This document shows, piece after piece, positions 68-39,658 of a stretch of 39,658 nucleotides of DNA. Both the position numbers and the translations under genes were made by a program. Positions within the stretch are counted from its first letter, which is position 1, and each line of letters starts with the position of its first letter. Origin of the DNA: Macrostomum lignano (lineage: Eukaryota); NCBI GenBank assembly GCA_002269645.1, contig NIVC01001947.1:1-39658 (forward strand). Direction: 5' to 3'. The notes beneath the pieces were generated by a model that was not told where the DNA came from, ran no database searches, and saw only the letters and a program-made list of their open reading frames with translations.

Positions 68-5175
<5,108 letters not shown>

Positions 5176-5456: not shown

Positions 5457-8400
5457 TCAGTCGTCGACTCCGATAGACATCTCCGACCGACGCATCTGAA
5501 TGCCGAGCACCATCTTCTCGGCGATATAGCGGTAGACGCTCAGCCAGGCCTTCTGAACCTCACGGGTGTACAACGGGCCCAGCTTCCGCTCCATCGCATA
5601 GTCTATGGCCGGCCAGAGGCGCTGAAATGTTTTATTTGATTCGATTTTTTTACTATGATTCATAGGCGTAGGAGCGTTTCAAAATGTGGGGGGCCAGGTC
5701 AGTGGCGGATTTAGGGGGCTGGGGCGCATAGGGTGCACGCCCACTGTCGAGTTAGATTTTTCTATTTTTATGGAAAATGCACATTATCATGCACCAATTA
5801 TTTTTAGAATCGGTGTTGTCAGCACTCATTTTAGCGTTGCAGGCACTCTTTTAGCGCCGTGGGCACTCATTTTAGCGCCACAGCCCTTATTTTAGCGCCA
5901 CAAGACCTCATTTTTGCGCTGCAGGCACCCATTTTAGCGCCACAGGCACCCATTTTAGCGCCGCAGGCACTCATTTCAGCGCTGCAGGCGCTAGCGCCAC
6001 AGGCACTCATTTTAGCGCCGCAGGCACTCATTTCAGCGCTGCAGGCACTCATTTTAGCGCTGCAGGCACTCATTTTAGCGCCGCAGGCACTCATTTTAGC
6101 GCCACAGGCACTCATTTTAGCGCCACAGGCACTCATTTTAGCGTCACAGGCACTCATTTTAGCGCCGCAGCCACTCATTTTAGCGCCGCAGGCACCCATT
6201 TGAGCGCTGCAGGCGCTATGTTTTGTGGCCCTGCAGCAAAATGTATTTATGCAAAGCAGCAAAAATAAAAATAAGAGTAAAAAATAAACAAAAAATTTAC
6301 ATTTTGCAGTTAAAATGTGGAGGGGCCATGGCCCCACTGTTCCCCCGTTCTTACGGCTATGCTACGCTCGTATGATTTAGTCTACTACTAGTATTAACAA
6401 CTTTTCAGTAGATACAAAATTGATTTTTAACTACAGTTATTTAAGCATTCAGACAAATGAGATAATGTTGACTAGATAGGCAATTTCATAAATATGGCCT
6501 ATACTAGCCTAATGTAGTTAAAGTATTTTATTCTACTTTAATGAAGGCTCACTACTGAGTGTAAAGACAATCACATTATTATTTATTTGCATGTATTTCT
6601 TATTAGAAAGGTAATTCATACCAGAAGAAGAATATTGGGTGCTGCCTCCTATCAAAAGCATTTACAAGTGTTTTGTTGAAAAATGAAAAACTCCATTCCC
6701 CGTAAACCTGTCTAATAAAAATTTCCCAAGAAACATAGTTCCCATCCTCCTACTTGAATAGCCCTTGCTCTAACACTAACCTAAACCCTAACCTAACCTA
6801 AATTGTCCTGTTTCATGTGCTAACTGATAGTCTCTGTGGGTTTTAACACTGGGGGGAAGACAAGGCAAGTATACAGATAGTGCACGTTCGTATTTGGAAA
6901 ATCCGCATCGAACACTCCAACACTACTTGATATTTGCATCTAAGTGGGGGGGGGGTAAATATATGCAGATATCTGATATAATTTCAAATATGTCTTCAGC
7001 TCCGAGAGCTGATATGGCATATCAATCCGATTAGCCTTGGGATTATTATCAAGTCTTTAAGCGTCATTTGGATGTACAGGAAAAGACAGCAAGGTTAACA
7101 TTATTGCTCTGTATTTAGACTCCCACAGATGCAGAATTTTCTGATCCTCATAAGAAGATGAAAGTTGATGAGAGTGAAATTATGATCATTACTGAAAAAC
7201 AAGTGAGCTAAGCTAATAATTAAGACTCAAAAGTTGCATCTTCATATTAGGTTTCTTTTTTGAGCTTCACGGATGTAACTGAGACGTTAATGCATCCAGA
7301 AATCTGCGAGGCGTCAGGCAGTCTTGCAATGAGATCAATCAATAACAAAAATCAAACTTCTCTCTCAGGAACTGCAAGCCTAGACTTGTAACTCGAAACA
7401 ATTCACGATGATACAATAAACAATCAATACTGCGTGTCTTATGCATCTCTATGCTTTATGAAACTTGTGGCTATAGCCTACAAGTAAAAACTACGAGTAG
7501 GTTACAGCCGATCAATGGGATGCCGTCTTAGAAGGCCGTTCGTTCAGCCTCAAATCTCAATGCAAAGCAAACCCGTTTGAACTGGAGCAGATTAAAGGCA
7601 ATAAAATGTCTGCACTGATTTTTGGACACGCCCTTGGGCTACAATGGATTGCTAGGGAGTTTTTAATAGGATGTTGCACCACACAATATTAATCCTGCAA
7701 TTTGACTCAAGTGAATATTTTGGTACTCAAGTCCTAAATGAGGCAATGCACATCCAATTTAATTACTACTTTAGTTCTCGTATGCAATAAATTCTATGCA
7801 TGCTCCTTTCCGAAAGTAAATGCATATCTACTGGACAAACTTCAGTGTGCACTGTTGTTCCTTTATCAGTGCGAGGCCAGTTTAATATAAGTGAGTGGCC
7901 CCAAATGTTAACGTACGTACACTGGCGCGTTTGTCGGATTGGCGGTCTGTACATTCAAGAGACGAGAGTCAATGCGAACGGCCTCTCCGTCAGCGAATGT
8001 ACATTCAAGAGACGAGAGTCAATGCGAACGGCCTCTCCGTCAGCGAATGTACATTCAAGTGACGAGAGTCAATGCGAACGGCCTCTCCGTCAGCGAATGT
8101 ACATTCAAGTGACGAGAGTCAATGCGAACGGCCTCTCCGTCAGCGAATGTACATTCAAGTGACGAGAGTCAATGCGAACGGCCTCTCCGTCAGCGAATGT
8201 ACATTCAAGTGACGAGAGTCAATGCGAACGGCCTCTCCGTCAGCGAATGTACATTCAAGTGACGAGAGTCAATGCGAACGGCCTCTCCGTCAGTGAATGT
8301 ACATTCAAGTGACGAGAGTCAATGCGAACGGCCTCTCCGTCAGCGAATGTACATTCAAGTGACGAGAGTCAATGCGAACGGCCTCTCCGTCAGTGAATGT

Positions 8401-10281
8401 ACATTCAAGTGACGAGAGTCAATGCGAACGGCCTCTCCGTCAGTGAATGTACATTCAAGTGACGAGAGTCAATGCGAACGGCCTCTCCGTCAGCGAATGT
8501 ACATTCAAGTGACGAGAGTCAATGCGAACGGCCTCTCCGTCAGCGAATGTACATTCAAGTGACGAGAGTCAATGCGAACGGCCTCTCCGTCAGTGAATGT
8601 ACATTCAAGTGACGAGAGTCAATGCGAACGGCCTCGCCGTCAGTGAATGTACATTCAAGTGACGAGAGTCAATGCGAACGGCCTCTCCGTCAGTGAATGT
8701 ACATTCAAGTGACGAGAGTCAATGCGAACGGCCTCGCCGTCAGTGAATGTACATTCAAGTGACGAGAGTCAATGCGAACGGCCTCTCCGTCAGAGAATGT
8801 ACATTCAAGGGAAACTAGCTCTTACCATCACGTGCTCAGGACGAACGTGAAAAGCGCAGTGGGCCTGTCCCAACGCTAGCAGAACCGAGTTCAGCACCAG
8901 GGCGTCTTCTAGGCAGTCGACAGCGGCGCCCAGCGCCTGCATCACAGCTTCGCCATGCTTTTTCAATTTCTCGGGATCTGGCTCGTAGTCTGCTGACGCG
9001 GCGGCGTTGTTTTCATCTGAGCGAGCCAGAAGCTTGCGGAACAGGCTCCTCATTGACTTGTCCGTCTCGAATAGCCTGATGAGGTTGACGAGTGTAATAG
9101 GAATATTGTACGAGCTCAAATAAAATAGTCTAATTAGAAAACAGTTGTCTAGAGAGACTGAAAAGTTTTAAATTAATTTCTAATTGAGCACATGTCAGCT
9201 TTGCATGCTTTTTGCGACTTCAACTTTGACATCGAGTAGCCCTGCCTGGCCTTACGAGCGCATAACCTTCGATAACCCCGTCAGGGAAGCCTGACTTTTA
9301 GTAGAATTTTATTCTTCGCTACCCAGCGGACACAGCAGTCAGTGCAGTTGATTAAGCAGCATTTCTCTTTCATCTGCTCCAGTCTCGACCGTCCAGCCAT
9401 CTATTGGCCTTGAGAAGGGAAGCCACATTCGGATTGGCTATCCCCTTTGTGTAACTGGCAGAGAGGAACTTGAAGCACGACCGATCTTAAAAGCTTCCGA
9501 TTCTAAATTTTCTTACAACTTTCACGCTAGGAGTTTTGTTAAAAGTTTCCGCTGTATCAGGATGTAACACTCGCGTTATATGAAAAAATTGAAAGTTAAA
9601 TTTCGCTTTAAAATGCGAGTTAGAATATTTAAATTTATAAGCACTTCACAGCCGATTTTTTACCCGAGGCTGTCGAACGCGCGAAAATTGCAACAAATTA
9701 CCATTCTTCCTACTAAAATGCTTACATAAATCTTCAATATAACTCACACCAGCTCGATATTCATATATCAGAAGCCTGGAGGTGAGATCAGCGCGTTTTT
9801 CAGCGAATTAGACCTTCAAAAATTTTTTTTCATAGAACGCCCATAGAACGGGAGAGTTGAGTTCCCAACAACGCCTAAATTACTGGGGTGTTATGGAGCA
9901 TCGAATTCACACTGTGCAATCAAGTTTCAAGTTTCAATCAATGAATAATAATTAAATATTATTATTAAATATTGTTAGTAGTTGTCAAAAAGCAAAAACG
10001 GTTTCCCCGTCCAGGTGGTCAAGTGACACAGTGCTTTAGCCACCCTGCCCCTGTTCGCATGGACTCCCACTCTCCCATATTTACTTTGGCACCCACCGGA
10101 TAAACACGAGCGCGCCAGTTCCGGCCAGGTCCTCGCAGACGCGGGCCCAGGTGCTCCTGACCAGGGCCATCTGGTCAGGGCTCAGCCGGTCGCCAATCTG
10201 ATCGTTCAGCCGTCTCTCGGCGGCCGATTCCGACGCAGCAACGGCGCCGTGGTGCGCCTGCTTGGCCTGAGCGCAGCCCAT
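5457..10281 (-). CDS. Globin, 199 aa, N-terminal MGC acylation motif (globin X/neuroglobin-like); exons 10281-10097, 9075-8826, 5621-5457
   Basis: GT-AG introns at the canonical globin positions B12.2 (VFIR|LF) and G7.0 (HVM|RLW). CD1 Phe (SLF), distal His E7 (LKKHGEAV), proximal His F8 (GQAHCAF). Exon lengths 185+250+165 = 600 nt, in phase. Confidence 0.92.
5661..6361. mobile_element. hAT-like MITE with imperfect TIRs and an internal 21-bp tandem array
   Basis: Left end CATAGGCGTAGGA versus reverse complement of the right end CATAGCCGTAAGA. The 8-bp flank CTATGATT on the left reappears on the right as CTA[cgctcgta]TGATT. An 8-bp TSD is typical of hAT elements. A CAGTGGCGGATTTAGGGGG terminus-like segment is nested at ~5699. 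Confidence 0.6.
5822..6215. repeat. 21-bp minisatellite (GCACTCATTTTAGCGCCRCAG)n, ~18 copies
   Basis: Read directly; it produces the LILAPQA and MSACGAK pseudo-ORFs. Confidence 0.95.
7948..8808. repeat. 50-bp tandem satellite, ~17 near-identical copies, in globin intron 2
   Basis: Unit GTGACGAGAGTCAATGCGAACGGCCTCTCCGTCAGYGAATGTACATTCAA, period 50, no spacers. Confidence 0.97.
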
Positions 10282-11164
10282 CTTACAGCTCCTCGTTGGA
10301 ATTCTTTTGTACTCTGCTTAATTGGAAATATCTTCTTTTGCCAGGTCTAGCTGTCAGTAGAAGACGGGCTCTCATATTGAAAAGCCCCGTCTCAAATCAG
10401 GGAGCGATGCTGCTGATTGGCTGTCTGCAGAGGAGGCATCGCTTGCCAATGGTGCAAAAGTACTCCATGAACACTGTCTGTGTAGGCTTGAGTTTGAACA
10501 AGCTAAGGTCAAAAGTAGTAACAGGCCGTTACTACTTTTCGTTATCGTTCTATTCGGCTAGACAATCTGTTGATAAACCAACAAATTTTGTTACAGAAGT
10601 GGTCTCCAGCCTCTGTGCCTTTCTCGGGTGGCCGATTTAGAAAACTATTGCAATAGTATACGCCACAGCGCCTATAGGGATTAATGAGATTAAGCGGAGG
10701 CGAGTCTCCAATGAGATGGAGAAGACAGAGGGCGAGAGAGCGAGGCGGAGATCCTGGCTGAGAGTAAGGGCCATCAAGCGGGAGATACGGTCGGGATTGT
10801 ATTACCGCGAGAGATATGAGGCTTGGCTTGGCTCGCTGGCAATGAGAGGCCGGGCGGCATCGATTCATTTAGTAAGAGAAAAATGTCTCGCGAAACGTGA
10901 GCTGGCCCTGCCAAAGTATTTATAGTCTCTGCCGCTATCGCTACGGATTTCTTATGGCCACGCGAGACGGAGTCGACCTCGGTGCATGGGCGTCGAGATC
11001 TAGAAGCAGAGCCTCCAAAACCCCCGTTTCAGACAACTGCAGTCTATCCTATTTTACTAAGCATAATATAACTACTGGTCATGAGATTCTGAGTCTTAAT
11101 TTTTACAATTGTCAACAAAACGATTGATAGGAACATGAAATTTATTAAGTGAAAATACTGTCTG

Positions 11165-11436
11165 TGGCGCTGAATTGGCGCTAAATCTCACCTGTAGCGC
11201 TGAATTGGCGCTAAAATCTCACCTGTAGCGCTGAATTGGCGCTAAATCTCACCTGTAGCGCTGAATTGGCGCTAAAATCTCACCTGTAGCGCTGAATTGG
11301 CGCTAAAATCTCACCTGTAGCACTGAATTGGCGCTAAAATCTCACCTGTAGCACTGAATTGGCGCTAAAATCTCACCTGTAGCACTGAACTGGCGCTAAA
11401 ATCTCACCTGTAGCACTGAACTGGCGCTAAAATCTC
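11165..11436. repeat. 30-31-bp minisatellite (GCRCTGAATTGGCGCTAAAATCTCACCTGTA)n, 9 copies
   Basis: Read directly; each unit carries CACCTG, and the GCG-type units carry a TAGCGC...GCGCTA inverted pair. Confidence 0.95.
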
Positions 11437-12354
11437 ACGTGTGGTGCTCAAATGACTCAAAAATATCAGGCCGTATGAATAAAGTCTGTAAGAACTTGCA
11501 AGTTCCGCCTTTAAATTTGAGACGGAGCAGCTGCTCAAGTCTGGGAATTCTGCGTCTCTGGTCAGGTCGGAAGACTGGCGATCCGGATAAAGTTCCGTTG
11601 AGCGGGAGCTTATTTCGGAAAGAGTTCTGCCGTGTAGAAATATAAAGACACTCATCTGATTCAAACTGACCGAGGTTTTACTCAGCCTCTGAGTCTTTGA
11701 TTGAAATCCAGAGCAACAACTTTGAGCAAATTCTCTAGATCAAGTTGTTTTCTCAGAAGTCACCGCTCCGTTTATTCATACAGACTTGAGACCGAGATGA
11801 AACTACTTGGTTTCATTTTATTGCTGAATATCTGTAAATTATGCAATTCACTCATTTAAAAATCATTTGGTTTTGGCAAAAGAAACTGACTGTCTCTGGA
11901 CCTCTAGCGCTCCCCCTCCCTACTCCTGCCTGAGCTTACAAGAGCTATAGGGAATTAAGTTCTACCAAAACTGCACAGCAAACGGACAGGAAATTTTCTG
12001 CGACCGCGACAGCTGTTTCGGCCTGTCTTCTTTTTGTATCCGCAGCTTAGGTCGAAGAGCCACTGGCCTGCGCTGGGAAGAAAAAATTTTTCGCTTGGAG
12101 CTGACTGTTAGCTGCAGTCAGTAGCGCAACTGTGCCTGCATATTGGCAAGTGTAGACTGCATCAGCTGTTGCTGCCGCTAAAAACCACCCCGTGCGGGTA
12201 GGGAGAGGAAGGGAAGGAGAAGACACGGCCAGCGCAGTATAAATCAAGCAGCAATATTCGACTGCTGTTCTTTCTAATCTTTCTATTTTCTTCGCACAGC
12301 AACTTTGCCAGAGAAGAGCCCAGCTATTGGTAAGCACAATGCACTGAATTACTG

Positions 12355-13232
12355 TTGGGTCTTAGTGTTCCAGTCTTGGTTCCTACAGCATGGGGTCTTA
12401 GTGTTCCAGTCTTGGTTCCTACAGCATGGGGTCTTAGTGTTCCAGTCTTGGTTTCTACAGCCTGGGTCTTAGTGTTCCTGTCTTGGTTCCTAAAGCCTGG
12501 GTCTTACTGTTCCAGTCTTGGTTCCTACAGCCTGGGTCTTACGAGCGTACTGTTCCAGTCTTGGTTCCTACAGCCTAGGTCTTAGTGTTCCTGTCTTGGT
12601 TCGTACAGCCTAGGTCTTAGTGTTCCAGTCTTGGTTCCTACAGCCTGGGTCTTACGAGCGTACTGTTCCAGTCTTGGTTCCTACAGCCTAGGTCTTAGTG
12701 TTCCTGTCTTGGTTCGTACAGCCTAGGTCTTAGTGTTCCTGTCTTGGTTCGTACAGCCTAGGTCTTAGTGTTCCTGTCTTAGTTCCTACAGCCTGGGGTC
12801 TTAGTGTTCCAGTCAATTAGTTCCTACTGCATCGGTCTTACTGTTCCTGTGTTAGTTCCTACTACTTGGGTCTTACTGTTCTTGTCTTGATTCTTACAGC
12901 AGGGGTCTTACTGTTCTTGTCTTGATTCTTACAGCAGGGGTCTTACTGTTCTTGTCTTGATTCTTACAGCCTGGGTCTTGCTGTTCCTGTCTTGATTCCT
13001 ACAGCCTGGGGTCTTAGTGTTCCAGTCTTGGTTCCTACAAACTGGGGTCTTGCTGTTCCTGTCTTGGTTCCTACAGCCTGGGTCTTACTGTTCCTGTCTT
13101 GATTCCTACAGCCTGGGGTCTTACTGTTCCAGTCTTGGTTCCTACAGCCTGGGGTCTTACTGTTCCTGTCTTGGTTCCTACAGCCTGGGTCTTGCTGTTC
13201 CTGTCTTGATTCCTACAGCCTGGATCTTACTG
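12355..13232. repeat. 35-36-bp minisatellite (GGGTCTTASTGTTCCWGTCTTGGTTCCTACAGCCT)n, ~25 copies
   Basis: Read directly; the unit is internally dimeric (GTCTT...GTTCC twice). Two units carry an 8-nt insertion. Confidence 0.95.
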
Positions 13233-14211
13233 TCTTTTACCAATTACTAAAGCCTGTTCAATGCTTAGCAGCTCTGTTTCTGTTGTCAAGGTAGTGACTA
13301 AGTCATCTGACGCCTGTTTAACGCGTAGCTGATGTGCACTTTATTAATTTGTTTACTCACTCTCGCAGCATGATTTGACACGGCAAATACAGACTATTTA
13401 CCTAAGCAATTATACTCTTTGAGTGCAGACTAATTCATTGTCAAATCAATAATTCGAGGCAATTAACAAAGCCTTTCCAGTGTGCAATCGAGACGAAAAG
13501 AACTTGTTGCCAACAGTGATAAACCGTGTGAATTGTAACACTTTCGAGTTAGAGTAGGAATGGCTAAGAGGCAATTGTGAACCATCTTCTAACGTGTAGC
13601 TACTAGCGCTAAGAGTGTAACACGAGAAATTCGCATCCTATAGACTTAGGAAGGTGCGTAGGAAGGTCGCATCCCGATCGTGACTGGAGAAACATCTGCA
13701 GCAGATTGAATCAGATTTCTTCGCGTGACTTTACTGCAATTCTCAGACGATTGCAAGCATTAAAGTATTAAAGCGGAAGGATTTTTTTAGAATAAAAGAT
13801 GTCGGATCAAACTGCTTTTGTCTAGCAAACTTTAGGCTAACTGAACTTTACTGAAGTCGAGATATCGTTTCGTTTCCTTTGCGCATTTGAAGCGGCTACA
13901 TCATGCAAAAATCAGTCTACTATAATACCCAAGAACCAAACCCTAGTGGCATAGCAACTATTGGAAGTAGACAAATATGAGCTATCTACATCACACTAAA
14001 TGCTCTGGCAAAGTTTGGTCGTTGTCACCATCGGAACATCTATAATTAAGGAGAACTACCACATCCTTTAGTAGACATTTTACCTGTTTTGAAATGAATC
14101 TTGAAGCCTTAACATTTTTTTCCTTCATGACATACCGGACAACTTTAGAAGCTTGTAGATGTGGACTACCTAAAAAGTCATATTTGTTATATAAAAAATT
14201 GCTATATCGGG

Positions 14212-14445: not shown

Positions 14446-14546
14446 ACGGGATCCCGTCGGAGGCCTTCATCAAATTAACCGCGCAGCAATTTATTGATTC
14501 GAGTATCTCGCACCTGCCCGCAGTTCGCTAAGCGATTCATTTAGCA

Positions 14547-16478: not shown

Positions 16479-17177
16479 AGGATCTTGGCTCTCGGCGAAA
16501 AAAAAGAAATACAATACATTGACTCAATTAGGAGGGCTAGAGCTAGAGAAGAAAAATGACAGTTCATCAAAAGCAGACACTTTGCCCCTCCGAAAGTCCA
16601 TACAGCGGCTTAATTAGAGAAAGTATCCGAATAAAAAAATGGCGCACTCCGTGCAAACCACCTTTTTGGCCATCTCGTTCTCCGGACTAATAAGTTAAGA
16701 TCGTGACAGATGTGACATTTGCTGACTCAGTCTTTTGCTAATCCTTTCACTGGCTTGAATCTACGCTTGTAAGTAAAGAATTCAGCTGACAGAAAAGACT
16801 AATTATAAACTGGTTTAATTCGACATCGAGAGCGCGTCTGGGTTTAATACTCGCCAGATTTGCTATTTATAAATCATAACCAAAGCTGCAATGTATTGTT
16901 TAGTAATTGGCACGAAATTTACGTTAGTACTTACTAATAGTAGACCACTGTTTCAAATGAAGAAGTTTATGTTAAGTTAGTTATAGGTTACTTATATATG
17001 AACAGTAATAGCAGCGGTTTGAGATCGCAGTGCATACGCAGAACAAGCGAAACAATAGGTAACAATCCAAATTACCAGACCTGAACCTCGCGATCCTTTG
17101 GTAGCATTTCTAAGAAGCAGTTTGTAATTTAAGACAAAATATTTAATTTGCGAAGAAGATAAAAATACATATTGAAA

Positions 17178-17585: not shown

Positions 17586-17867
17586 ACTCAAGCAGTCCTT
17601 GACTGGAAAGTGTATAGTCAATGCGCTATTACATTTTAATAGGAAGTGGTAGCAGGTCAACCAAATTTATGTGGATATTGTCGGCTAGAAAAAAGCTATC
17701 ACAAGGCGTGCCGCCCATCCTACTCTCTGAATTCTGAACAGTTTAAACATCCGTTGCTTACTGACATGTAAATATGTTTCTGATTGATATTCAAAGCCTC
17801 TACTAGCGTATTTGGCACGCGAACAAATGTTTCAGACGCGAGCCGACCAGAATCCCCAATTAAGGTT

Positions 17868-19712: not shown

Positions 19713-20556
19713 GGTTGAATGAACTTAATTGTTTCTGTTACAGTCCTATCGATCAAGAATCGTGTACCGATTTCCACTGTAGCTGACGAAATCCGCCTTT
19801 CCTCACGGCTTCTGCAGTTTTTTTGCCCGAATTTGAAGGCTCAGTTGGGAGGTGGGCCGGTTGAGTTGGGCGAGGATCGCATGAGGCACTCCTGAAATCT
19901 CTGTCTTTTGTCTCCGCACACTATTTCATTACTATAGCCACCCTCACTCAACCCGCTCGCCTTGTTCGTCTTCGCAGTCATGCCACTGCGAGTTAAACGC
20001 GCTTTTCTATCTCTCAGCTGTCTCCCTCCGCGCGCTTAGCCAAACTTGATCAAAGGCAAACAAATCTTCCAGTTCTGGAAAGAGAAAATCAATCAATTCA
20101 CAGACTATGAGGGGGAATAGGGTTTTAGCGGAGCAGCCCACTCAATCTGTGCTCTGTCCCTTTAGCTCCTGAATAGAAGCAACGCAGTAACTGGACAAAA
20201 GTGATCTGGCTGACTTGCTTTGCAACGGCCATGCAAACTAAACTTTTGTTCCTCGAACTGTACTGTTATTTTCTGATTCATTTCATACTAGTGTAATCTA
20301 AGTAATTTCTGTGGGAAGTTCTTCGTCGGGAACAAGCTAGTAAAGCACTCTTACGAGCGTATTGGTCTTAATATTTAACTGCAATTCAATAATTTTTAAC
20401 GACATTTTATTTTTCCTGAAAAGAAATGACGCGATTTTTACAAAACCGAAAAAAAGAATAGTCAGTTCAATGATGCAAAGAGTCATGGAGAATTGCTTTT
20501 ACTAAGTAATTTAGTCAATTGGATCAATATAAAGCAAGTTTTCAACGTTTCAAGTC

Positions 20557-25686
<5,130 letters not shown>

Positions 25687-26484
25687 TCTGTTTAGTCTGT
25701 TATAGAACACTCGGCAGTCTTAGCGGCAGAAAAAAGCTCCAGGAGTCTTAGTGCTGCAGTACAGTTTGATGCAGAAGCTATGAAGATGCTGTCGGGGCAC
25801 AACTGGAGTGCTTGGTTGGCACGCTAATGACGTTGTCGCCGTGGTATGGAGCGGGGGTGGGCGTTTGCGACCTGTCATTCAGACTATTGGCTAGATGATG
25901 ATGCGGTCGGTAACAGGCTGTTGGACGGATGCTAGCGGTGGGAGGGGAAAGACAGAGAGAGGTTGGGGAAGAGTAAGCTATGGCCTGAACTGGGGAAGAG
26001 GGAGGTACGAAGCTGCGGTGGATGTCAGACTGAGCTGTATAAAACTTCTGCTCACAAGGGGGAGAAAATATTGTCGGGAAGTGTTTGAGCAAGCTGAGTT
26101 GGCGGACCTTCCCAACGGGTTATGCTATGCTGTGCTGGGCTGGAGGAAATGGTTGGAACGAGCAGTATTGAGGTATGGGGCTTTATTGACCTGTGAAGTA
26201 GTTCTGAGAATTTTTGCTTTCTAAGCCACATGTAACTGCTGTTGCTAACTGCATCCAGGTTGCTCTGAGGCTAAAACTCGCTTTGAAATATTGTTTCCAT
26301 AACTGTTAATGCATGTATTGTTAAAACACGTTTTGCAAAATATTGCAACAGTTTTAAATATGAGCTATACTCGTATTTTCTCTGACTGTGAACGATCTTT
26401 GAATGAATTTTAATGAATTTAAATCAACTCATTGTAAAATAAATTTTGCTTTGTAGTCCGGAAATATAGTTAAAATCTTACCGA

Positions 26485-26850: not shown

Positions 26851-27729
26851 TCTATAATCTAGTTTGGAAATATATGCCAGTTGCCAGTATAAATTATCAA
26901 TATGTAAAAAATATTAACAGTAGGTCAAAAAGTACGATTAAACTACAAAACTATTGTAGTCAAGAAAGCAAGAAAGCAAGAAAGCAAGCGTGACAAAATT
27001 AATAAATATATGTATATATATAATAAAACTGAAAATTAAAATGAAACATTTTCGAGCGAAAAAAACGAGACATCTACATGTACATTATATGCCCTTCTTA
27101 ATCTAATTTTAACGTCTGTCCTGTACACAGCTACTAGATTAACCTATAGCTGGGCCACTCAGCACATTTACATGCAAGCTACTTTCAGTTCAGTAGTAAG
27201 TTAAACAGAAGCATTTTAATGAATTTTAAAGACAAGGCCTTTTTATTGGCTCTTACCCCCCCCCCCCAAGCTTAAACTCTCAAACTCCACACGGAACCTC
27301 TACCCCTGGACCGCCACCCAATTTTTATTACCTTCCTCGGTTGTTTCAGCCATTAATAGTGTCAGTGGCCAATGTACATTATGGCTGAACCAATTAGAAA
27401 GCTGTTTACGCCTGCAGACGGCTTCTAAGCTTATCAAAGTCAGTTATTTCAGCTGCCTTTATTATAAAATAGCTTATGTATTCTTCATTGCTACTGAATT
27501 GAAAGTCGAAAGCTGTTTTGCTAAGTATATATGCCTGAGTGGCCCATCTATTATTCTAGTAATCTGTGGTTCTGAACCAGTTTCCCCTCTTAGAAAAGAC
27601 TCAAATATATTAGTATTATTTTTATCATACGCTCGTATGTAAAACAAAAGCAACCGCTGTTTAAGAAAAGAAAAGCTAATTCTATTAAAATTCTAGCAAG
27701 AAAAAAGTTTTTCATCAATAACTTCGAGC

Positions 27730-30700: not shown

Positions 30701-32519
30701 GAGACATGGAAGGGAGAGAGAGTGAGACATAGAGGGAGAGGGTGAGATGGAGGGAGATGGTGAGATGGAGGGAGATGGTGAGATGGAGGGAGATGGTGAG
30801 ATGGAGGGAGATGGTGAGATGGAGGGAGAGGGTGAGATGGAGGGAGATGGTGAGATGGAGGGAGAGGGTGAGATGGAGGGAGATGGTGAGATAGAGGGAG
30901 ATGGTGAGATGGAGGGAGAGGGTGAGATGGAAGGAGAGGGTGAGATGGAAAGGAGAGAGAGTGAGATAGAGAGAGAGAGAGTGAGATGGACGGAGATAGA
31001 GACATGGAAGGGAGAGAGAGTGAGACATGGAGGGAGAGGGTGAGATGGAGGGAGAGGGTGAGATGGAGGGAGAGGGTGAGATGGAGGGAGATGGTGAGAT
31101 GGAGGGAGAGGGTGAGATGGAAGGAGAGGGTGAGATGGAGGGAGAGGGTGAGATGGAAAGGAGAGAGAGTGAGATAGAGAGAGAGAGAGTGAGATGGACG
31201 GAGATAGAGACATGGAAGGGAGAGAGAGTGAGATGGAGGGAGAGGGTGAGATGGAGGGAGAGGGTGAGATGGAGGGAGAGGGTGAGATGGAGGGAGAGGG
31301 TGAGATGGAGGGAGATGGTGAGATGGAGGGAGATGGTGAGATGGAGGGAGAGGGTGAGATTGAGAAAAGGGAGTGAGAGACAAGAAGACGAGAGAGTCGC
31401 AGCGTGAGAGCATTGAAAAAGCCCTGCTTGGGTGAAGAGATAAGGAGAGTATAACGATGCAATAGATGCAGTTAGGAATTAAAAGTGAGTTTGAGTTTCT
31501 CAAAAAATCAAGGCGGGATGACTTGACAGCACATGCATTAGAGTTTAAGAGCTTAAGCAAGTCTAATTCAGACTTGGAGATGACAGTGAGCAAAACTCAC
31601 CATGTACACCAGCGGAATCACATCGTAGTTCTCGATGCCTTTGTACCGATCGGCCATGTTGAAGTAGGAATTCTCGTCATCTCTGCCAATAGTCTTGGCG
31701 ACCACCAAGAAGCACTTGTTCACACTTCCGTGACATTCCCGAGATCGAATCTTGCCGTGCTTCAGGACGCCTTTCAGATAGAAGGTGAGGCACTTCATCG
31801 AGCTCCCCCGGCTGCGAGGAATCAGTGCAGTGAAGAGTGGCTTCAGTAGGGACCGTTGAAATATTACACACCCTGTCTGACTCTCCCTGACACCCTGTCT
31901 GACTCTCCCTCACACCCTGTCTGACTCTCCCTGACACCCTGCCAGACTCTCCCTGACACCCTGCCAGACTCTCCCTGACACCCTGTCTGACTCTCCCTGA
32001 CACCCTGCCAGACTCTCCCTGACACCCTGCCTGACTCTCCCTGACACCCTGCCTGACTCTCTCTGACACCCTGCCTGACTCTCCCTGAGACCCTGTCTGA
32101 CTCTCCCTGACACCCTGCCTGACTCTCCCTGACACCCTGCCAGACTCTCCCTGACACCCTGCCAGACTCTCCCTGACACCCTGCCAGACTCTCCCTGACA
32201 CCCTGCCTGAGTCTCCCTGAGACCCTGCCTGACTCTCATTGACTGACACCCTGTCTGACGGTCATTGTCTGACACCCTGCCTGAGTCTCCCTGAGACCCT
32301 GCCTGACTCTCATTGACTGACACCCTGTCTGACGGTCATTGTCTGACACCCTGTCTGACTTTCATTGACAAATTGCTGTCGATCTTTCATGGACAGACGC
32401 TTTGTTTTGCCTGCCTCTGAAGTTTTTCAAACTCGATCATCTGTTACACGCTTATCGTAATTCTTACCGAATATGCTGCAGAATATTACGAGAGCCAGAG
32501 ACCACTTGACAGTCAACAT
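27730..32519 (-). CDS. Secreted Ly6/uPAR (three-finger)-like protein, ~143 aa; exons 32519-32468, 31811-31601, 27897-27730; one extra G needed at ~31805
   Basis: Signal peptide [17 protein letters not shown]. Mature domain has 8 Cys: [15 protein letters not shown].....GGCGKC...[11 protein letters not shown], ending in the LU-domain C-x4-CN motif. The exon 2-3 junction is in phase. The exon 1-2 junction is 1 nt out of phase unless GGGGG is GGGGGG. No hydrophobic GPI signal. Confidence 0.7.
27905..31380. repeat. 3.5-kb purine-rich 18-bp satellite (GAGATGGAGGGAGAKGGT)n with higher-order blocks, in Ly6-like intron 2
   Basis: Runs of the 18-mer punctuated by a recurring ~75-bp block (GAAAGGAGAGAGAGTGAGATAGAGAGAGAGAGTGAGATGGACGGAGATAGAGACATGGAAGGG). 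Confidence 0.97.
31866..32368. repeat. 22-bp minisatellite (GACTCTCCCTGACACCCTGYCW)n, ~22 copies, in Ly6-like intron 1
   Basis: Period 22, read directly. Confidence 0.95.
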
Positions 32520-32900: not shown

Positions 32901-33594
32901 TATATGCTCCCTTATTATTGCAAACTCGTAAGCAGTCCGAAAACAACACTGGTAATTAAAAGGGCGTTTATTATTCGTAAATTTTATCTTTTTGGTAATT
33001 TTTTATTTAGCTAAAGGGGGTTAGAGGGGGTTGTGGCCTAGTGGTTACTAGCCAAAAATAAATGCGGCTGCGAACGAAATCAAACCCTGGCACATGCCCC
33101 ATTTGAGGTGGTTAAAACAAAAAGTGCAAAATTTGAAACTTTATCAAAATCGAGGATATATTTATGCCAATATGTACATGTACATATTTAACCCTTTCTT
33201 CTCCACAATAGAGTTGTTAGAGTCAGGCTTAAAAACAAAAAACTATTTAGAAATCATAACAGAATAAAACTATTAACAAAATAATTAAAGCACTCTTCAA
33301 GAAGTTCATACAGCAAATATACATGTAGCTTTAAATCAAATAGATTAATAAAGTGCATATAGCTCGATCGTACCAGTCTTCTATACACAGAACTTGAAAT
33401 ACGCTTGTTGAAAGTTGAGCAGATCAAAATTGTGAATTGGGTATCCATGGCTGATTAAACATTCATACATAAAATAAGCATTACACTTCTAATGTTCTAC
33501 TAACAGTGTTGTCCGAGTAAGTAGTCTACATGGACAACTAAAAACTAGTAAGACACTACACTCGCAAGATCGTGAAAATTTCACCGTTTGCATC

Positions 33595-34240
33595 ATTGAA
33601 TCCTAAGGTCCAAGATTGTATCATTTAATAGTAAGGTCTAAGATTTTATCATTGAATAATAACGTCCACGATTGTATCATTGAGTAGTAACGTCCACGAG
33701 TATGATTGAATAGTAAGGTCCACGATTGTATGATTGAAGGTCCACGATTGTATCATTGAAGGTCCACGATTGTATCATTGAAGGTCCACGATTGTATCAT
33801 TGAAGGTCCACGATTGTATCATTGAAGGTCCACGATTGTATCATTGAAGGTCCACGATTGTATCATTGAAGGTCCACGATTGTATCATTGAAGGTCCACG
33901 ATTGTATCATTGAAGGTCCACGATTGTATCACTGAAGGTCCACGATTGTATCATTGAAGGTCCACGCTTGTATCACTGAAGGTCCACGATTGTATCATTG
34001 AAGGTCCACGATTGTATCACTGAAGGTCCACGATTGTATCATTGAAGGTCCACGATTGTATCACTGAAGGTCCACGATTGTATCATTGAAGGTCCACGAT
34101 TGTATCACTGAAGGTCCACGATTGTATCATTGAAGGTCCACGATTGTATCACTGAAGGTCCACGATTGTATCATTGAAGGTCCACGATTGTATCATTGAA
34201 GGTCCACGCTTGTACCTCGTATCATTGAATAGTAAGGCCC
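33595..34240. repeat. 22-bp minisatellite (GAAGGTCCACGATTGTATCAYT)n, ~28 copies
   Basis: Period 22, with CATT/CACT alternation in the right half; ends ~140 bp past the aquaporin stop. Confidence 0.96.
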
Positions 34241-34379: not shown

Positions 34380-37300
34380 TCACAGCTCTGTCATGCTGGT
34401 GTCGGTGGTTGTCATTCGTTGACGCCAGTGCTTCTCGCCCGTCTTCGCTAGCGACGAGCCCTTCTTGGTCTGCGACGCGGTCTCAGGGTCGGTGCCGTCG
34501 TCGTCGTTGTCTTTGTTTTTGTCCGCTGGTCCAGCCTCGACGCTCCCGTTGGCTTCGCACTGGCAGATTTGGCAGCGGCTGCCCTGAGCGTCGTTGCCCT
34601 TCTCAGTGTTTTTCTCATCGCCTGTCAGCATGAAGCTGCCTTTAAATAGCAGCGCGTAGCAGATGCCGCTGAGGCCGCCGCCACAGGACGGCCCGGCGAT
34701 GTAAACCTGAAACAATCCGTTTTTATTAAGCAAAAATGAATTTGTCAAAAGGGAGTTCGAATGCGTCAGGCATGAAATAAACCAACGATAGTGCTATATG
34801 GTTAGAAAAGCTTTCAAGGACGACTTAAGTAGAAAGACGGGAAACCTCGTTTCTTAGAAAAGTTTTGAAGGCACTTTTTCCCGAAAAAAATACACTACGG
34901 AGATAGGAAGTTTTCATTTTTTCAGCACAAAAATTGTTATTGCGTTTGATAGGAGGCAGATCCAGTGTTCATCTTTTGATATGTTGTGCCTTTTTTATTG
35001 CTCTATCGATATTTATAAACCTTTTCGTTCAGAAAATTAGGATTCTATGTTAATTTTTTATTCTACGTATATTTCCTGTATCTAAAAAATCACAAAAATG
35101 CATGACACAGCTCCAATATTTGGTTTTATGAATCTATTTTATCATCTCTGTTACAAATATTTGCTACACAGTCGGGTAAGAATGATAAAAAAGACTCATG
35201 AAGCTAAAGAGCCGAGCCGTGGCATTCTAATGTATTTCAAGCACAAGACACGCGAAAATATACGTAGGATAAAAAATTAACATAGAATCCTAATTTTCTG
35301 AACGAAAAGCTTTATAAATATCGATAGAGCAATAAAAAAGGCACAACATATCAAAAGATGAACACAGGATCTGCCTCCTATCAAACGCAATAACAATTTT
35401 TGTGCTGAAAAAATGAAAATTTCCTATCTCCGTAGTGTATTTTTTCGGGAAAAAGTGCCTTCAAAACTTTTCTAAGAAACGAGGTTTCCCGTCCTTCTAC
35501 TTAAGTCGTCCTTGAAAGCTACATGTTACTGGGGTATCGTAGAAAAAATGACTTCGAATTCGACGGAGTGACATAAGTCAGTTTAGTTTTACTACGTCTA
35601 TGGAGAAATCCGATTCTGCAAGCAACAGAAATATCGCCACAGTGAGTGAATTTCGTGAACAGACGCTCAGAATTTGACTGGTGAGATAGGTCAAGCAGTG
35701 CATATGGCAAAAAGTAAAAAGGTGACTTCAGATTCGACAAAATAAGTGAAGTGTCCCTACAGTCGGCTTGTATTTATGTCTCTTATGTCTCCCTCTCTTC
35801 CCTCTTTTCTGCCACTCTTGTTGCAATCCTTAGACATGCCTTACATAAGTTTTCAATATCGAATGCATACGGACATATACACGGATATATTAGACTAATT
35901 GACATGCTATACTTTGCGTCATAATGCCACAAACTTTATCATTTCGACTAGCGTTGATTTACTTGGGTAGCAATGTTCTTCAGTTGCGAGTTGATCTTTA
36001 AGATCCTGTACGAATAATTAAAACAGACACTTAGCTGGGAAAATGGGAAAATCTCTTTATACAAAATACACAGGGGTGATAGCATTTTCCGTGGCTATAG
36101 TATTTCTCTAAAATCAAAGCCAGGACCATTGTATATAGCCACAGTATATACAGTGGTCCTTGAATCAAAGTCGATCATGTTGAAAAAACAGCTCAGACAA
36201 AACGTATAATAGCTTCAGACGACACGATACTCTAAATGAATTAATAACAAATTGCCTGTTTTGCTATAAAATCTGGGTCTCACGTCACGACCCCACATTG
36301 GGGCGCTTTCATTAGGCCGAAATTTCACTTCGCCGAAAAGCACTCTCACTTGACCGAAACTTCACATTGCCGAAAAATCATTTTAGCAGCATCATTTCTA
36401 TGGTCGAAAGGGGATGTGAACTTTGCCACTCTGCTACCAAAGTGGAAGCACGATATGGTCACTCAGTTTTTTGTATGGAATATTTTCGACATTTCTGACT
36501 TCATTTGAGAGTGAACTCTGATTGCTTATTATTTTCATTGCATTTTCTGTCTGAGTCGGATGGACTTTTAAGTTATAGAGTGTTTGTATGTTTTTTATGG
36601 CTCCTTTGAAAGCATGCAGATTTGCCTGGATTCCGATTCGTAGAGTATGCATGGCTCTAAGATTCACTTTAATGTTACCATGTTAGTTTCGGCCTAGTGA
36701 AGTTTCGGCCTTATGAAAGAGCGTGCTAGTCATTTCGGAAAAGTGAAGTTTCGGCCAAGTGAAAGAGGCTGCTAAAATGATTTTTCAGCAATGTGAAGTT
36801 TCGGCAATGTGAAGTTTCGGCCTAGTGAATTTTCGGCCTTGTGAAAGCCCCCCCCCGCTGTCCCCCCACATTAATTTGGGAAAATTGAAGTTGTCGTCGC
36901 CAACCTCTCTGAGGGCCAACCCCCAAAAGGCACAGAGAATGTACATGCCTGACGATTAGAAATTCAAGGTCGCGGTACACCCTGTGTGAGCGTGTGCATG
37001 AGTGCGGGCCTGTGTACAGAATTAGCGCTATTGAATTCGCTTAGGAGTCAACGGAACGGGCAGGATTGCCTCACCGCTGGGTGTGGGACGATGTCGCTGA
37101 AGGCGTTGTGCCAGGGTGCCCGCAACAACCCTCGGGCAAACTTTTGTTGAAATTTTAACATACTCCACACGCTGCAGTAGTTCTTGAATGAACAGCCATG
37201 CACGTACCCAAAGCTGATCGTACCGACCGCTGGCAACGGCTGGCCCCAGCGTCCTGATTGGGTTCATGCTTGAGCCTGACAACACTGCCTGTAGTGGAAA

Positions 37301-38409
37301 GTGATTAATAAATAAACGATCGTAGAATATTTTCGTTGTACAGTTGTACTGGCTGTTTAGCTGGGAACATTACGAGTGTACTCAACGTAAAGGTCAACGC
37401 AAAGTATAGCTTTTCTGATATTATCATGAAAGAGAACTTGATGAGTGTGGTCCTAGATGAACCACCATTCACGTGGGTTGTTAAATGGCGCATGGCCCAT
37501 CTGTCTTGACCCTATGGTGCGCTGCACAAGAAACACAAGATGCCGGTTTTGAAACTTAATGAACGAGTAAACAATAAACAGGATTCAGTCCTGGTCTAGC
37601 ATATTCTCCACGATCCTTGTCCTGGAGCTGAACTTGCGCGCTCATGGCAGTGACAAATGTGAGCGTTGCTTCCATCCTTTCTTCCTGCGTCACTCATGGC
37701 TAGAAAAAACTTTCGAATAAACTATTCTGCGACTCCCTACAACCCGACAAATTCCTCAATCAATCAATTTTTGACGGTAGTTTGCTCTCGTCAATAATTT
37801 TTAGGGTTTACCAGACTAGAGAGCCGTAGTGAACCAAATGGATGCGGCGACAGACTTCGCGACCACAAAGAAATGAAATTACAGCTTTGACCCTTCTGCG
37901 TATTTTTGTTTGGACTAAATTCAATACATGAAAAAGGCAGAAAGAAGCTATTGGTAAAGTAGTAAGTACCCTTTGATCCATAATGTCCATGAAATGCTAC
38001 AGAACGATGCTCAGTGAAGCTATTTGCCATCGAGACCAATGCGCTCACCCCGGCGAAGATGCAGCAGCTGACTTGCAGTCCGGCAGCCAGCGACATGGAG
38101 CCTGTCTGGTCAAATCGCAGACGGTCTGTGCATGCTATCACCGGTAGAACCATCGCGAAGGTGAGCACCAGCTCCATGCCGAACGCTTGCGCCGGGTGCG
38201 TCAGCGTGGGATTGAACGAATTAATTCCGAATGAGGTAACGTTGTGCAGCTGGAACGGAGTCAGCAACTTCAGCAGCAGTGCGCCGGCAACGCCACCAGT
38301 GCACTGCATGGGTATGTACAGCAGAGTGCGGATCAGCGACACATTGCCTGCGGGGCGAAAATCGCGTGACAGGTCTATCTGTCTATCTATCTATCTATCT
38401 ATCTATCTG

Positions 38410-38444
<35 letters not shown>

Positions 38445-38784
38445 GTCTATCTATCCATCTATCTATATATGGCTCACCTGAGACAAAAAAGCCCAGTGTA
38501 AGCGCCGGGTTGATGTGGGCCCCGCTGATGTGTCCCAGGCTCCAAACAACGCACGCTACAATCAGGCCTGAGGTGAACCCGGCCCGCAGCACCTTGGCGT
38601 CAACCGAGAAGCATTCGCTGCCATCGGACTGATGGGGAAGTCGATGTTGGGCGCGCAGCAGAAGAACACGCAGCAGCAAGGAGCCAACGCACTCTGCTAG
38701 GCAGGCCCGCCACAGGCCGCGAGACCGCAGATCGCGACTCGAGCTGCTGACCATCCGTCTCAGGAGGCGGCTGGCAGCCGTCAT
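34380..38784 (-). CDS. Aquaporin (MIP family), 337 aa; exons 38784-38478, 38347-38049, 37288-37208, 34706-34380
   Basis: ACLAECVGS, GHISGAHINPALT (NPA1), QAFGMELVLTF, SGSSMNPIRTLGPAV (second motif NPI), WVYIAGP. GT-AG junctions in phase (307+299+81+327 = 1014 nt). Confidence 0.92.
34809..35520. mobile_element. Foldback/MITE-like element, ~712 bp, with ~267-bp terminal inverted repeats, in aquaporin intron 3
   Basis: 34809-35075 is the near-perfect reverse complement of ~35254-35520, with only a few mismatches seen and a ~180-bp spacer. Both ends read AGCT; no longer TSD found. Confidence 0.85.
36300..36863. mobile_element. MITE-like element with inverted ends and repeated TTTCGGC motifs; candidate 9-bp TSD (Mutator-like)
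   Basis: GGGCGCTTTCATTAGGCCGAAATTTCAC ... GTGAATTTTCGGCCTTGTGAAAGCCC. An internal inverted block AAAAATCATTTTAGCAGC / GCTGCTAAAATGATTTTT is present. CCCCACATT occurs at 36291-36299 and 36864-36872. Confidence 0.6.
38373..38468. repeat. (ATCT)n / (GATA)n microsatellite filling most of aquaporin intron 1
   Basis: About 24 copies within a 130-nt intron. Confidence 0.97.
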
Positions 38785-39658
38785 GCGGAAACGAAGAAGT
38801 CCGGACCGTCTCTTACGCGTACCGAGGCTGCCTGTCCGGTCCCTCTTCGAGTTAGAAGAGGCTTAATGGCGTTCCGAATGCAATCTACGGCCGAATAAAT
38901 AGCAATGCAGAAGCCTGTTCTGGGGCTTGCAGTACAGCTGCTAGCTATATGGAGAAGCGCAATGGAATACGGCTGCCTTGGCGTTTGTTTAAGTTATAAA
39001 AAACGGTGTCTCAGAGTATACTAGAATGGCAAGTTACAATCGCTACTCAGCTAATTTATTGGCAATAAAAGTGGCCAGCTTTGGTCTCTTACTGCGCTGA
39101 GATCTCCCTCTTGTTTTTCATTTTAGCTGACGACAAAAAAATGAAATCAAATTAAAGACTAGCTAACTTAATATTGTCCACCGTAGCGGCTCAGAATGCT
39201 TTACGCTCGTACTATAAATAATTTTATGGTAATGCAACAGGTTGAGACTTGTGGTCGGTTAATATAGACCCCACGACTGTTAATTGTTGAAAGGAAAAAA
39301 GGGCATTAACTTGTTGCTATATATACCTGCTATATGACCTGCTTTGGTTGCAGTAAGTTGTCTCGTTAACAGTTATTATCTGACTGAGCTATTTGTTGGC
39401 TCTTTAGCTGCATGTCATGTCAAAGCGATACCATTTTTTTGAGTTTGGAAGATACTGAAAAACTAGATCCTATTGCTGTTAGGAAAACTCCCCAGTAGAT
39501 TTACGCTCTGCTCACTGTTCTTCACTGTGCATATCACTCGCGACAGCATACAGTTGTGGCTTATCACTGACCGGGGCGAGTCAATATTGTTCGGAATTTT
39601 GCGTCAATCAATTTCGATTTTGACACCCATCAAACTTCTTAAGTCCACGCAAAGGAGA

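What the first reader, a model, noticed from the sequence alone, without database searches (positions are those of the whole stretch)
6363..39211. Recurrent TA-CGAGCG-TA insertions: candidate excision footprints of an unseen CGAG-ended Tc1/mariner transposon
Seen: the 10-mer TACGAGCGTA or its reverse complement TACGCTCGTA occurs exactly at 6363, 12540, 12653, 20352, 27628 and 39202 (five independent sites). Rough chance expectation is below 0.1 for the whole window on both strands. Variants also fit TA + pieces of CGAG...CTCG + TA: TACGAGTA (7492, 24215), TACTCGTA (26368), TACCTCGTA (34213), TAGCTCGTA (24052), TACGCGTA (38814) and the CpG-decayed TACGAGTGTA (37371); the shorter variants are individually weaker. 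All exact copies are non-coding; one 9/10 match lies in LINE ORF1 at ~4539. Three sites have internal empty-site controls showing insertion with TA duplication. Established: Tc1/mariner elements duplicate TA, and Minos (ends CGAG...CTCG) leaves TA-CGAG-TA or TA-CTCG-TA footprints. Inference: a Minos-like element left a dominant, longer 6-nt footprint (CGAG+CG) at very high density. This implies massive past cut-and-paste activity, or a site-marking process, although no element copy is seen here.
Basis: partly seen in the sequence, partly recalled or inferred. Interest (0 to 1): 0.82.

Follow-up and report, generated by a model that had tools for sequence, protein, structure and literature searches.

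The report
Recurrent TA-flanked transposon excision scars
A flatworm genome window carries the same 8-base insertion (CGAGCG plus a duplicated TA) at five unrelated non-coding places, most likely scars left when a cut-and-paste transposon jumped out; this is a known phenomenon seen at unusual density, and the transposon itself was not found.

Summary
TACGAGCGTA or its reverse complement occurs 6 times, representing 5 independent events, against 0.02 expected. The flanks are unrelated except for two copies in one duplicated block of a minisatellite. It is the only non-repetitive 10-mer in the window that recurs in independent contexts.

Two internal empty-site controls show an insertion with TA duplication. 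One is TA to TA-CGAGCG-TA in the 35-bp array. The other is TA to TA-CCTCG-TA in the 22-bp array.

Decayed copies (including CpG-to-TpG changes) and shorter TA-CGAG-TA forms are modestly enriched. This argues against an assembly artefact. The pattern fits excision footprints of a TA-targeting Tc1/mariner-type element with CGAG... ends.

No such element or transposase lies in the window. Seven Macrostomum lignano loci (151 kb) contain no exact copy, so genome-wide "massive activity" is not shown; a local-hopping trail or a lineage-specific burst is equally possible. Minos membership is untested, and the dominant scar has 6 nt where Minos leaves 4.

M. lignano paralogues show analogous TA-GGCC-TA micro-insertions with empty sites, so such scars are common in this genus.

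Verdict: a new member of a known kind, of moderate interest.

The parts
6363..6372 (-). Exact scar TA-CGAGCG-TA (read on the minus strand), about 25 bp beyond ORF 5867..6337(-), the highest-coordinate ORF in the LINE region
   Evidence: flanks have no paralogue in the window
12540..12549 (+). Exact scar inside a 35-bp minisatellite unit. The neighbouring unit 12498-12532 is the identical empty site (GGGTCT-TA-CTGTTCC).
   Evidence: the filled unit equals the empty unit plus CGAGCGTA
12653..12662 (+). Copy of the 12540 scar, made when a 113-bp block of the array was duplicated (109/113 identical)
20352..20361 (+). Exact scar about 200 bp downstream of ORF 20560..20976(-), which lies just below the nicotinic-receptor exon 21446-22138(-)
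27628..27637 (-). Exact scar in AT-rich non-coding DNA
39202..39211 (-). Exact scar about 340 bp beyond ORF 38434..38862(-), upstream (in gene orientation) of the minus-strand aquaporin exon
34213..34221 (-). Variant scar TA-CGAGG-TA (plus strand TACCTCGTA) in the last unit of the 22-bp array 33715-34214. Other units read ...TTG-TA-TCATTG.
   Evidence: 7-bp insertion with TA duplication relative to about 22 empty units
7492..7499 (+). Short form TA-CGAG-TA (Minos-type length)
   Evidence: this 8-mer class occurs 3 times against 0.60 expected
24215..24222 (+). Short form TA-CGAG-TA
26368..26375 (-). Short form TA-CGAG-TA (plus strand TACTCGTA)
37371..37380 (+). Probable decayed scar TACGAGTGTA (second CpG changed to TpG)
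16762..16771 (-). Probable decayed scar TACAAGCGTA (first CpG changed to CpA)
9253..9262 (+). Possible decayed scar TACGAGCGCA (T to C in the right-hand TA)
17801..17810 (+). Possible decayed scar TACTAGCGTA (transversion); weakest of the one-mismatch set
24052..24060 (-). Possible variant TA-CGAGC-TA; at chance level on its own
   Evidence: 1 observed against 0.18 expected

Best explanation
The TA-CGAGCG-TA sites are donor-site scars (excision footprints) of a TA-inserting, cut-and-paste DDE transposon of the IS630/Tc1/mariner type whose inverted-repeat ends begin CGAG(CG).

Shown: each testable event is an insertion of a constant short core plus a second TA at a pre-existing TA. The core is the same at unrelated loci, occurs in both orientations, and has mutated and shorter relatives.

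Inferred: the element inserted at TA and duplicated it. The transposase later cut with a stagger that left a few terminal element bases on each flank. End-joining of the two overhangs then fixed TA + terminal bases + TA.

The 10-mer is a near-palindrome (TACG-AG-CGTA against TACG-CT-CGTA). That is what the heteroduplex repair model, which I recall from Arca et al. 1997 (paper not held), predicts if identical ends CGAGCG...CGCTCG leave 6-nt overhangs. These would pair at 4 of 6 positions, with a 2-nt central mismatch resolved either way. An alternative is 3 nt retained from each of two slightly different ends (CGA... and ...GCG).

Two things cannot be decided from this window. One is whether the scars come from a genome-wide burst or from repeated local hops of a few copies along this 33-kb stretch. 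The other is which Tc1/mariner clade was responsible.
For: - Recurrence far above chance, with unrelated flanks.
- TA duplication with a constant core at two independent internal empty-site controls.
- Both orientations occur, 2 plus and 3 minus among independent events.
- 13 of the 21 TACGAG/CTCGTA hexamers in the window are followed by TA (or a decayed CA) within 0-4 nt.
- TACGAGTA/TACTCGTA occurs 3 times against 0.60 expected.
- One-mismatch copies are enriched, 11 against 1.13 including the 6 exact, and two of them are CpG transitions. The 12540 scar also predates a block duplication. The scars are therefore real and of different ages.
- The Minos end reads TA-CGAGCC (PMC3680223), and Minos leaves a characteristic 6-bp footprint (PMC3386967).
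- Independent analogue: M. lignano paralogues differ by TA to TA-GGGCC-TA and TA to TA-GGCC-TA micro-insertions at three sites.
Against: - There is no element, TIR pair or transposase ORF in 39.7 kb, so the identity of the core with element termini is unproven.
- As far as I know, a 6-nt core is longer than any canonical Tc1/mariner scar (2-4 nt per overhang), and 4-nt CGAG/CTCG overhangs offer no microhomology that would favour CGAG+CG.
- Scars far outnumber element copies locally, which is unusual for neutral fixation.
- There are no exact copies in 151 kb of M. lignano.
- Only two of the five-plus events could be polarised as insertions.
- The exact sites are oddly evenly spaced (P=0.006, post hoc), which the model does not predict.
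Confidence: 0.65

Rival explanations
1. These are scars of programmed or near-complete excision. A TA-bounded element family would be removed systematically, either in somatic cells or by a domesticated or hyperactive transposase, so the sequenced DNA shows only scars while the elements survive elsewhere (for example in the germline).
For: Scars greatly outnumber element copies in the window: at least 5-6 polarised or exact events against 0 elements. One scar form dominates strongly. The exact sites are evenly spaced.
Against: There is no evidence of germline/soma differences. Decayed copies and a scar duplicated inside a minisatellite show that the scars are inherited and ageing in the germline, not remade each generation. 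As far as I know, no programmed DNA elimination is known in flatworms.
Confidence: 0.06
2. A short templated micro-insertion from a process other than transposon excision. Examples are repair synthesis copying a fixed template, extremely truncated retroelement insertions, or another TA-specific nuclease.
For: The parent element is unseen. The 6-nt core does not match known canonical Tc1/mariner scar lengths.
Against: A constant core with exact TA duplication at unrelated sites, and a graded CGAG, CGAGG, CGAGCG series, is the signature of staggered transposase cuts. Polymerase-theta style insertions copy local flanks and would differ from site to site. Truncated LINE copies would vary in length.
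Confidence: 0.1
3. A technical artefact of sequencing, polishing or scaffolding (adapter, barcode or ligation-junction remnant).
For: The inserted string is identical each time and the exact copies are rather evenly spaced. The related M. lignano assembly loci have none.
Against: The insertions are at TA with TA duplication. Mutated copies exist. One scar was duplicated with its 113-bp block. From memory, the string matches no common Illumina, Nextera, PacBio, ONT or Hi-C junction sequence.
Confidence: 0.03
4. The motif is part of a dispersed repeat or MITE, or is a chance recurrence.
For: None beyond the two copies in one tandem array.
Against: Flanks share no similarity. Expectation is 0.02 or 0.014. 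Permuted-core controls are empty.
Confidence: 0.01

Closest known systems
Minos (Tc1-like, Drosophila hydei) excision footprints
   Same: TA target duplication. The element end reads TA-CGAGCC (PMC3680223), sharing CGAGC with the motif. A characteristic short footprint is left on excision (PMC3386967). A near-palindromic scar in either orientation is what the heteroduplex repair model of Arca et al. 1997 predicts (own knowledge; paper not held).
   Different: The Minos scar is 4 terminal nt + TA (6 bp added). Here the dominant scar is 6 nt + TA (8 bp added), and position 6 is G, not C. No Minos-like element or DD34E transposase was seen. The host is a flatworm.
Sleeping Beauty, Tc1, Tc3 and Mos1 canonical footprints
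   Same: Cut-and-paste at TA with staggered cleavage. NHEJ leaves TA + a few terminal bases + TA (PMC2874221). One dominant 'canonical' scar occurs alongside minor variants.
   Different: Those scars carry 2-3 nt per overhang (for example the SB footprint given in PMC2874221). Being short and AT/CA-rich, they are invisible against genome background. This core is 6 nt with two CpGs, which makes a natural census possible.
TA-GGCC-TA / TA-GGGCC-TA micro-insertions in Macrostomum lignano (found here)
   Same: Short GC-rich core inserted at TA with TA duplication, shown against paralogous empty sites, and clustered within about 1 kb.
   Different: The core sequence differs, so presumably the element family differs. 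None of these loci carries CGAGCG.
Ciliate IES excision (Paramecium TA-bounded IESs descended from Tc1/mariner)
   Same: TA-bounded elements removed en masse by a transposase-derived nuclease.
   Different: Paramecium excision is precise, leaving a single TA and no scar, and it is somatic. Here the scars are heritable and decaying.

Membership tests
Tc1/mariner (IS630-Tc1-mariner) excision footprint | Scar flanked by a duplicated TA at a site that was originally a single TA | tested here: met
   12540/12653 against empty units of the same array; 34213 against about 22 empty units. The other four exact sites have no comparator.
Tc1/mariner (IS630-Tc1-mariner) excision footprint | Scar core equals the terminal nucleotides of the element's inverted repeats | not testable with these tools
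The M. lignano loci have no TACGAG...CTCGTA TIR pair.
Tc1/mariner (IS630-Tc1-mariner) excision footprint | Same scar in both orientations, near-palindromic with a central asymmetry (heteroduplex/NHEJ of identical ends) | tested here: met
   2 plus and 3 minus independent events. TACGAGCGTA and its complement differ only in the central 2 nt (read directly from the sequence).
Tc1/mariner (IS630-Tc1-mariner) excision footprint | 2-4 nt retained per overhang | tested here: inconclusive
   The dominant core is 6 nt. This fits 3+3 from unequal ends, or a 6-nt stagger, which I have not seen described. The 4-nt form TACGAGTA occurs 3 times against 0.60 expected.
Tc1/mariner (IS630-Tc1-mariner) excision footprint | DDE/D transposase-encoding or MITE copies with TIRs present in the genome | tested here: inconclusive
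   Absent from the window's non-genic ORFs of at least 70 aa outside the LINE and the satellite (Pfam) and from TIR-pair searches. The genome-wide search could not be done.
Minos specifically | Ends CGAGCC... and a 4-nt + TA (6-bp) canonical footprint | tested here: not met
   The dominant scar is CGAGCG + TA (8 bp added) and its sixth base differs from the Minos end in PMC3680223. Resemblance only.
Dispersed repeat / MITE fragment | Homologous flanks around the motif | tested here: not met
ISL2EU / PIF-Harbinger scars | AT or TWA target duplication | tested here: not met
   The duplicated dinucleotide is TA, and the next bases are G, C, T, T and A, not a TWA pattern. TSD definitions are from PMC4482050.
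Programmed DNA elimination scars | Element present in germline DNA and absent from somatic DNA at the same site | not testable with these tools
   No read data are available. Decayed and duplicated scars argue against it.

The most novel reading that the evidence does not exclude
A flatworm Tc1/mariner-type transposase cuts 6 nt inside its ends and has removed essentially every local copy. It leaves a uniform, countable 10-bp scar at kilobase density. This would amount to a near-complete purge, or a programmed excision, of a TA-bounded element family, with the scars serving as a fossil record of every former insertion.
Probability: 0.08. Interest if true: 0.8.

Novelty: new member of a known kind. 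Interest (0 to 1): 0.45.

Why it matters
Excision footprints are textbook, but they are almost never visible in bulk because typical scars (TACAGTA and the like) are too short and common. A 6-nt, two-CpG core makes each scar recognisable on its own. In this genome one could therefore count past excisions directly, date them by decay, compare them with surviving copies, and ask how often cut-and-paste elements leave rather than stay.

If the density holds genome-wide, it implies tens of thousands of small insertions in non-coding DNA near genes from a single family. If it is local, it documents a local-hopping trail in a natural genome.

The scar also predicts the termini of an undescribed Macrostomum transposon, possibly with an unusual cleavage stagger. 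That could interest people developing transgenesis in this model flatworm group.

Tried and rejected
- **Chance:** rejected by dinucleotide shuffles, a Markov model and permuted-core controls.
- **Dispersed repeat:** rejected, because the flanks are unrelated.
- **Element in the window:** none found. There is no TACGAG...CTCGTA pair within 8 kb with at least 18/30 TIR matches, and no transposase domain in non-genic ORFs. Only globin came up there; LINE EN/RT, SLC3A2-like, nAChR and MIP came.
- **Same-species data:** all three homology searches found no identical proteins, so the source assembly is not in the collections. The LINE RT is 97-98% identical to M. lignano proteins, but the genes are only 50-56% identical, so the species stays unresolved (Macrostomum lignano or a relative).
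- **Orthologous empty sites:** the only shared synteny, a globin plus SLC3A2-like pair with L001, is too diverged (about 50% aa) to align non-coding DNA.
- **M. lignano survey:** 7 loci, 151 kb, with no exact copy. TACGAGCTA and TACGAGCCTA are present, but at chance hexamer frequency.
- **M. lignano DD37E/MS mariner:** its TIR starts CTGGG, so it is not the source.
- **Literature:** the 10-mer appears only in unrelated primer-type contexts, and no paper describes such scars in Macrostomum. Arca et al. 1997 is not held.
- **Rfam and tRNA scans of the window:** nothing found.
- **CCACTGTAGC recurrence:** dismissed, since two of its four sites are coding.
Full report
**1. Observation**

TACGAGCGTA or its reverse complement is present exactly at 6363(-), 12540(+), 12653(+), 20352(+), 27628(-) and 39202(-). 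One hundred dinucleotide-preserving shuffles gave a mean of 0.02 and never more than 1.

Sixty-base flanks are unrelated. BLAST of 300-bp contexts against the window finds paralogues only for the two copies inside the 35-bp minisatellite 12356-13233. Those two copies lie in adjacent 113-bp blocks that are 109/113 identical. They are therefore one event that was later duplicated, which leaves five independent events.

- A de novo scan of all 9-12-mers, counting only occurrences with dissimilar flanks, ranks this 10-mer first among non-homopolymer, non-tandem words (5 contexts against 0.014 expected).
- Of the 60 composition-matched strings TA + permutation(CGAGCG) + TA, only the real one recurs. 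All the others together occur once.

**2. What the sites are**

The 35-bp array provides a clean internal control. Unit 12498-12532 reads TGGGTCT-TA-CTGTTCCAG... The units at 12533 and 12646 are identical to it except that they read TGGGTCT-TA-CGAGCG-TA-CTGTTCCAG.... That is an 8-bp insertion at a TA, with the TA duplicated.

A second, independent control is the 22-bp array 33715-34214. About 22 units read ...CACGATTG-TA-TCATTG..., and one (33966) reads ...CACGCTTG-TA-TCACTG. The last unit reads ...CACGCTTG-TA-CCTCG-TA-TCATTG. This is a 7-bp insertion with TA duplication, and its core on the other strand is CGAGG.

Both polarisable events are thus TA-duplicating insertions sharing the core start CGAG.

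- Of the 21 TACGAG/CTCGTA hexamers in the window, 13 are followed within 0-4 nt by TA or a decayed CA: CGTA six times, TA three times, and GTA, CTA, TGTA and CGCA once each.
- TACGAGTA/TACTCGTA occurs 3 times against 0.60 expected. The other short forms are individually at chance.
- One-mismatch 10-mers total 11, including the 6 exact, against 1.13 expected.
- The non-coding mismatched copies are TACGAGTGTA and TACAAGCGTA (CpG transitions), TACGAGCGCA (a transition) and TACTAGCGTA. The fifth one-mismatch copy, at 4539, lies in a LINE ORF and is probably chance.

Mutated copies, plus a scar that predates a block duplication, mean the insertions are genuine, heritable and of mixed age. They are not an assembly artefact.

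**3. Surroundings and source organism**

| Region (strand) | Content |
|---|---|
| 1 to about 6340 (-) | LINE with endonuclease and RT domains in several broken ORFs |
| 8808-10317 (-) | Globin gene |
| 14547-16478 (+) | Intronless SLC3A2/4F2hc-like ORF |
| about 20560-24667 (-) | Nicotinic-receptor-type channel exons |
| about 37000-38860 (-) | Aquaporin |

The window also holds more than a dozen minisatellites and a 3.3-kb G/A-rich satellite.

The LINE RT is 97-98% identical to two Macrostomum lignano predicted proteins. The best matches of the cellular genes are also M. lignano, but at only 52-56%. The globin plus SLC3A2-like pair is syntenic with M. lignano locus L001 at about 50% amino-acid identity. 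The window therefore comes from M. lignano or a related macrostomid. The exact assembly is not in the searchable collections.

No transposase domain was found in non-genic ORFs of at least 70 aa outside the LINE and the satellite. No TACGAG...CTCGTA pair within 8 kb has TIR-like complementarity. Rfam and tRNA scans are empty.

**4. Related sequence**

Seven M. lignano loci were fetched from GCA_002269645.1: L001-L007, 151 kb in two paralogue groups, roughly 55 kb non-redundant by my estimate.

- None has an exact TACGAGCGTA. At the window's density, about 7 would be expected in 55 kb. The density is therefore lineage-specific or regional.
- TACGAGCTA and TACGAGCCTA do occur there, but the hexamer is at chance frequency.
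- Alignment of the paralogues revealed three analogous events with another core:
  - L001:13535 reads GAG-TA-GGGCC-TA-CTAT where three paralogues read GAG-TA-CTAT.
  - L001:13570 has TA-GGCC-TA plus a 5-bp duplication, against an empty TA.
  - L003, L004 and L006 (about 13897) read TA-GGCC-TA where L001 has TA.

TA-duplicating micro-insertions with short constant GC-rich cores are thus a recurrent feature of Macrostomum DNA. This independently supports the footprint reading.

**5. Mechanism**

Established: Tc1/mariner elements insert at TA and duplicate it. [quoted passage not shown] The Minos end reads TA-CGAGCC (primer TACGAGCCCCAACC..., PMC3680223), and Minos leaves a characteristic 6-bp footprint in Drosophila (PMC3386967 citing Arca et al. 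1997). I recall the heteroduplex repair model from that paper, but I could not read it.

Inference: the scars derive from an element whose ends begin CGAG.

The dominant 6-nt core needs explaining. With 4-nt CGAG/CTCG overhangs, no partial overlap pairs, so CGAG+CG would not be a favoured product. Two models remain:

- **6-nt stagger.** Ends CGAGCG...CGCTCG cut 6 nt inside would give overhangs that pair at positions 1, 2, 5 and 6, with a central AG/GA mismatch. Resolving that mismatch either way yields TACGAGCGTA or its complement. This matches the single near-palindromic motif seen in both orientations.
- **3+3.** Three bases are retained from each of two unequal ends (CGA... and ...GCG).

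The CGAG and CGAGG forms would be trimmed products, or scars of a related 4-nt cutter. Only the element's termini can decide between the models.

**6. Scale**

- The absence from M. lignano loci, and the lack of any element here, fit a lineage-specific burst followed by loss.
- They fit equally well a trail of repeated local hops by a few copies along this 33-kb stretch on the sequenced haplotype. From my own knowledge, local hopping is typical of Tc1-like elements.
- The five exact sites are more evenly spaced than random TA sites (minimum gap 6177 bp, P=0.006, post hoc). The regularity vanishes when all 15 footprint-like sites are pooled. I leave this unexplained.

**7. Rivals**

- **Programmed or somatic elimination.** This would explain scars without elements, but it conflicts with the decayed and duplicated scars.
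- **Non-transposon templated insertion.** It cannot easily give a constant core with exact TA duplication and a CGAG series.
- **Technical artefact.** It is contradicted by the decay, the duplication and the TA specificity.
- **Dispersed repeat or chance.** Both are excluded.

**8. Verdict**

Minos membership, genome-wide scale and the 'site-marking' idea are not supported by anything tested here.

The phenomenon is known, and this is a new instance. It has one possibly unusual feature (the 6-nt canonical scar) and an unusually legible signal. Interest is moderate, at 0.45.

Noticed in passing
L001:13535-13543, L001:13570-13577, L003:13897-13904 (also L004:13900 and L006:8950): M. lignano paralogues differ by TA-GGGCC-TA and TA-GGCC-TA micro-insertions at sites that read a single TA in the other copies. 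L001 has five TAGGCCTA / TAGGGCCTA / TAGGCCCTA strings within about 600 bp. These are probably scars of another TA-targeting element with GG...CC ends.
   Followed up: partly
window 6363-39211: The five independent exact scars are unusually evenly spaced (gaps 6177, 7812, 7276 and 11574 bp; P=0.006 against random TA sites, post hoc). The regularity vanishes when the weaker variants are included.
   Followed up: partly
window 1-6340 (minus strand): LINE with endonuclease (Exo_endo_phos_2) and RT domains split over several ORFs. Part of the RT is 97-98% identical to M. lignano predicted proteins, although the window's cellular genes match M. lignano at only about 50-56%. A 21-bp tandem array (5822-6214) lies at its presumed 5' end and shares the string GGCGCTAAAA with the 31-bp array at 11162-11442.
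   Followed up: partly
window 28055-31364: A 3.3-kb G/A-rich satellite (18/36/54-bp periods, GC skew up to 0.94) creates spurious ORFs of more than 1000 aa on the minus strand. Arrays 71-76% similar occur in M. lignano loci (for example L003:1040-2183 and L005:12472-13437).
   Followed up: partly
window 8808-10317(-) and 14547-16478(+); L001:2298-4296 and 10001-11965: A globin gene next to an intronless SLC3A2/4F2hc-like gene. The pair is conserved in M. lignano at about 50% amino-acid identity, so it is either an old segmental paralogue or a distant orthologue. No closer match to the window's copy appeared among the M. lignano proteins in the collection.
   Followed up: partly
window 7948-8809, 11162-11442, 14218-14446, 26484-26850, 31868-32369, 33588-34214: Unusually many minisatellite arrays (units of 22-50 bp, some 96-98% homogeneous) fill the intergenic DNA. 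M. lignano loci show the same architecture, with large copy-number differences between paralogues.
   Followed up: no
window 25044-25472 and 38374-38470: A long (AGTT)n microsatellite of about 106 copies, and a (TCTA)n run in the aquaporin gene region, upstream (in gene orientation) of the minus-strand MIP exon 37791-38342.
   Followed up: no
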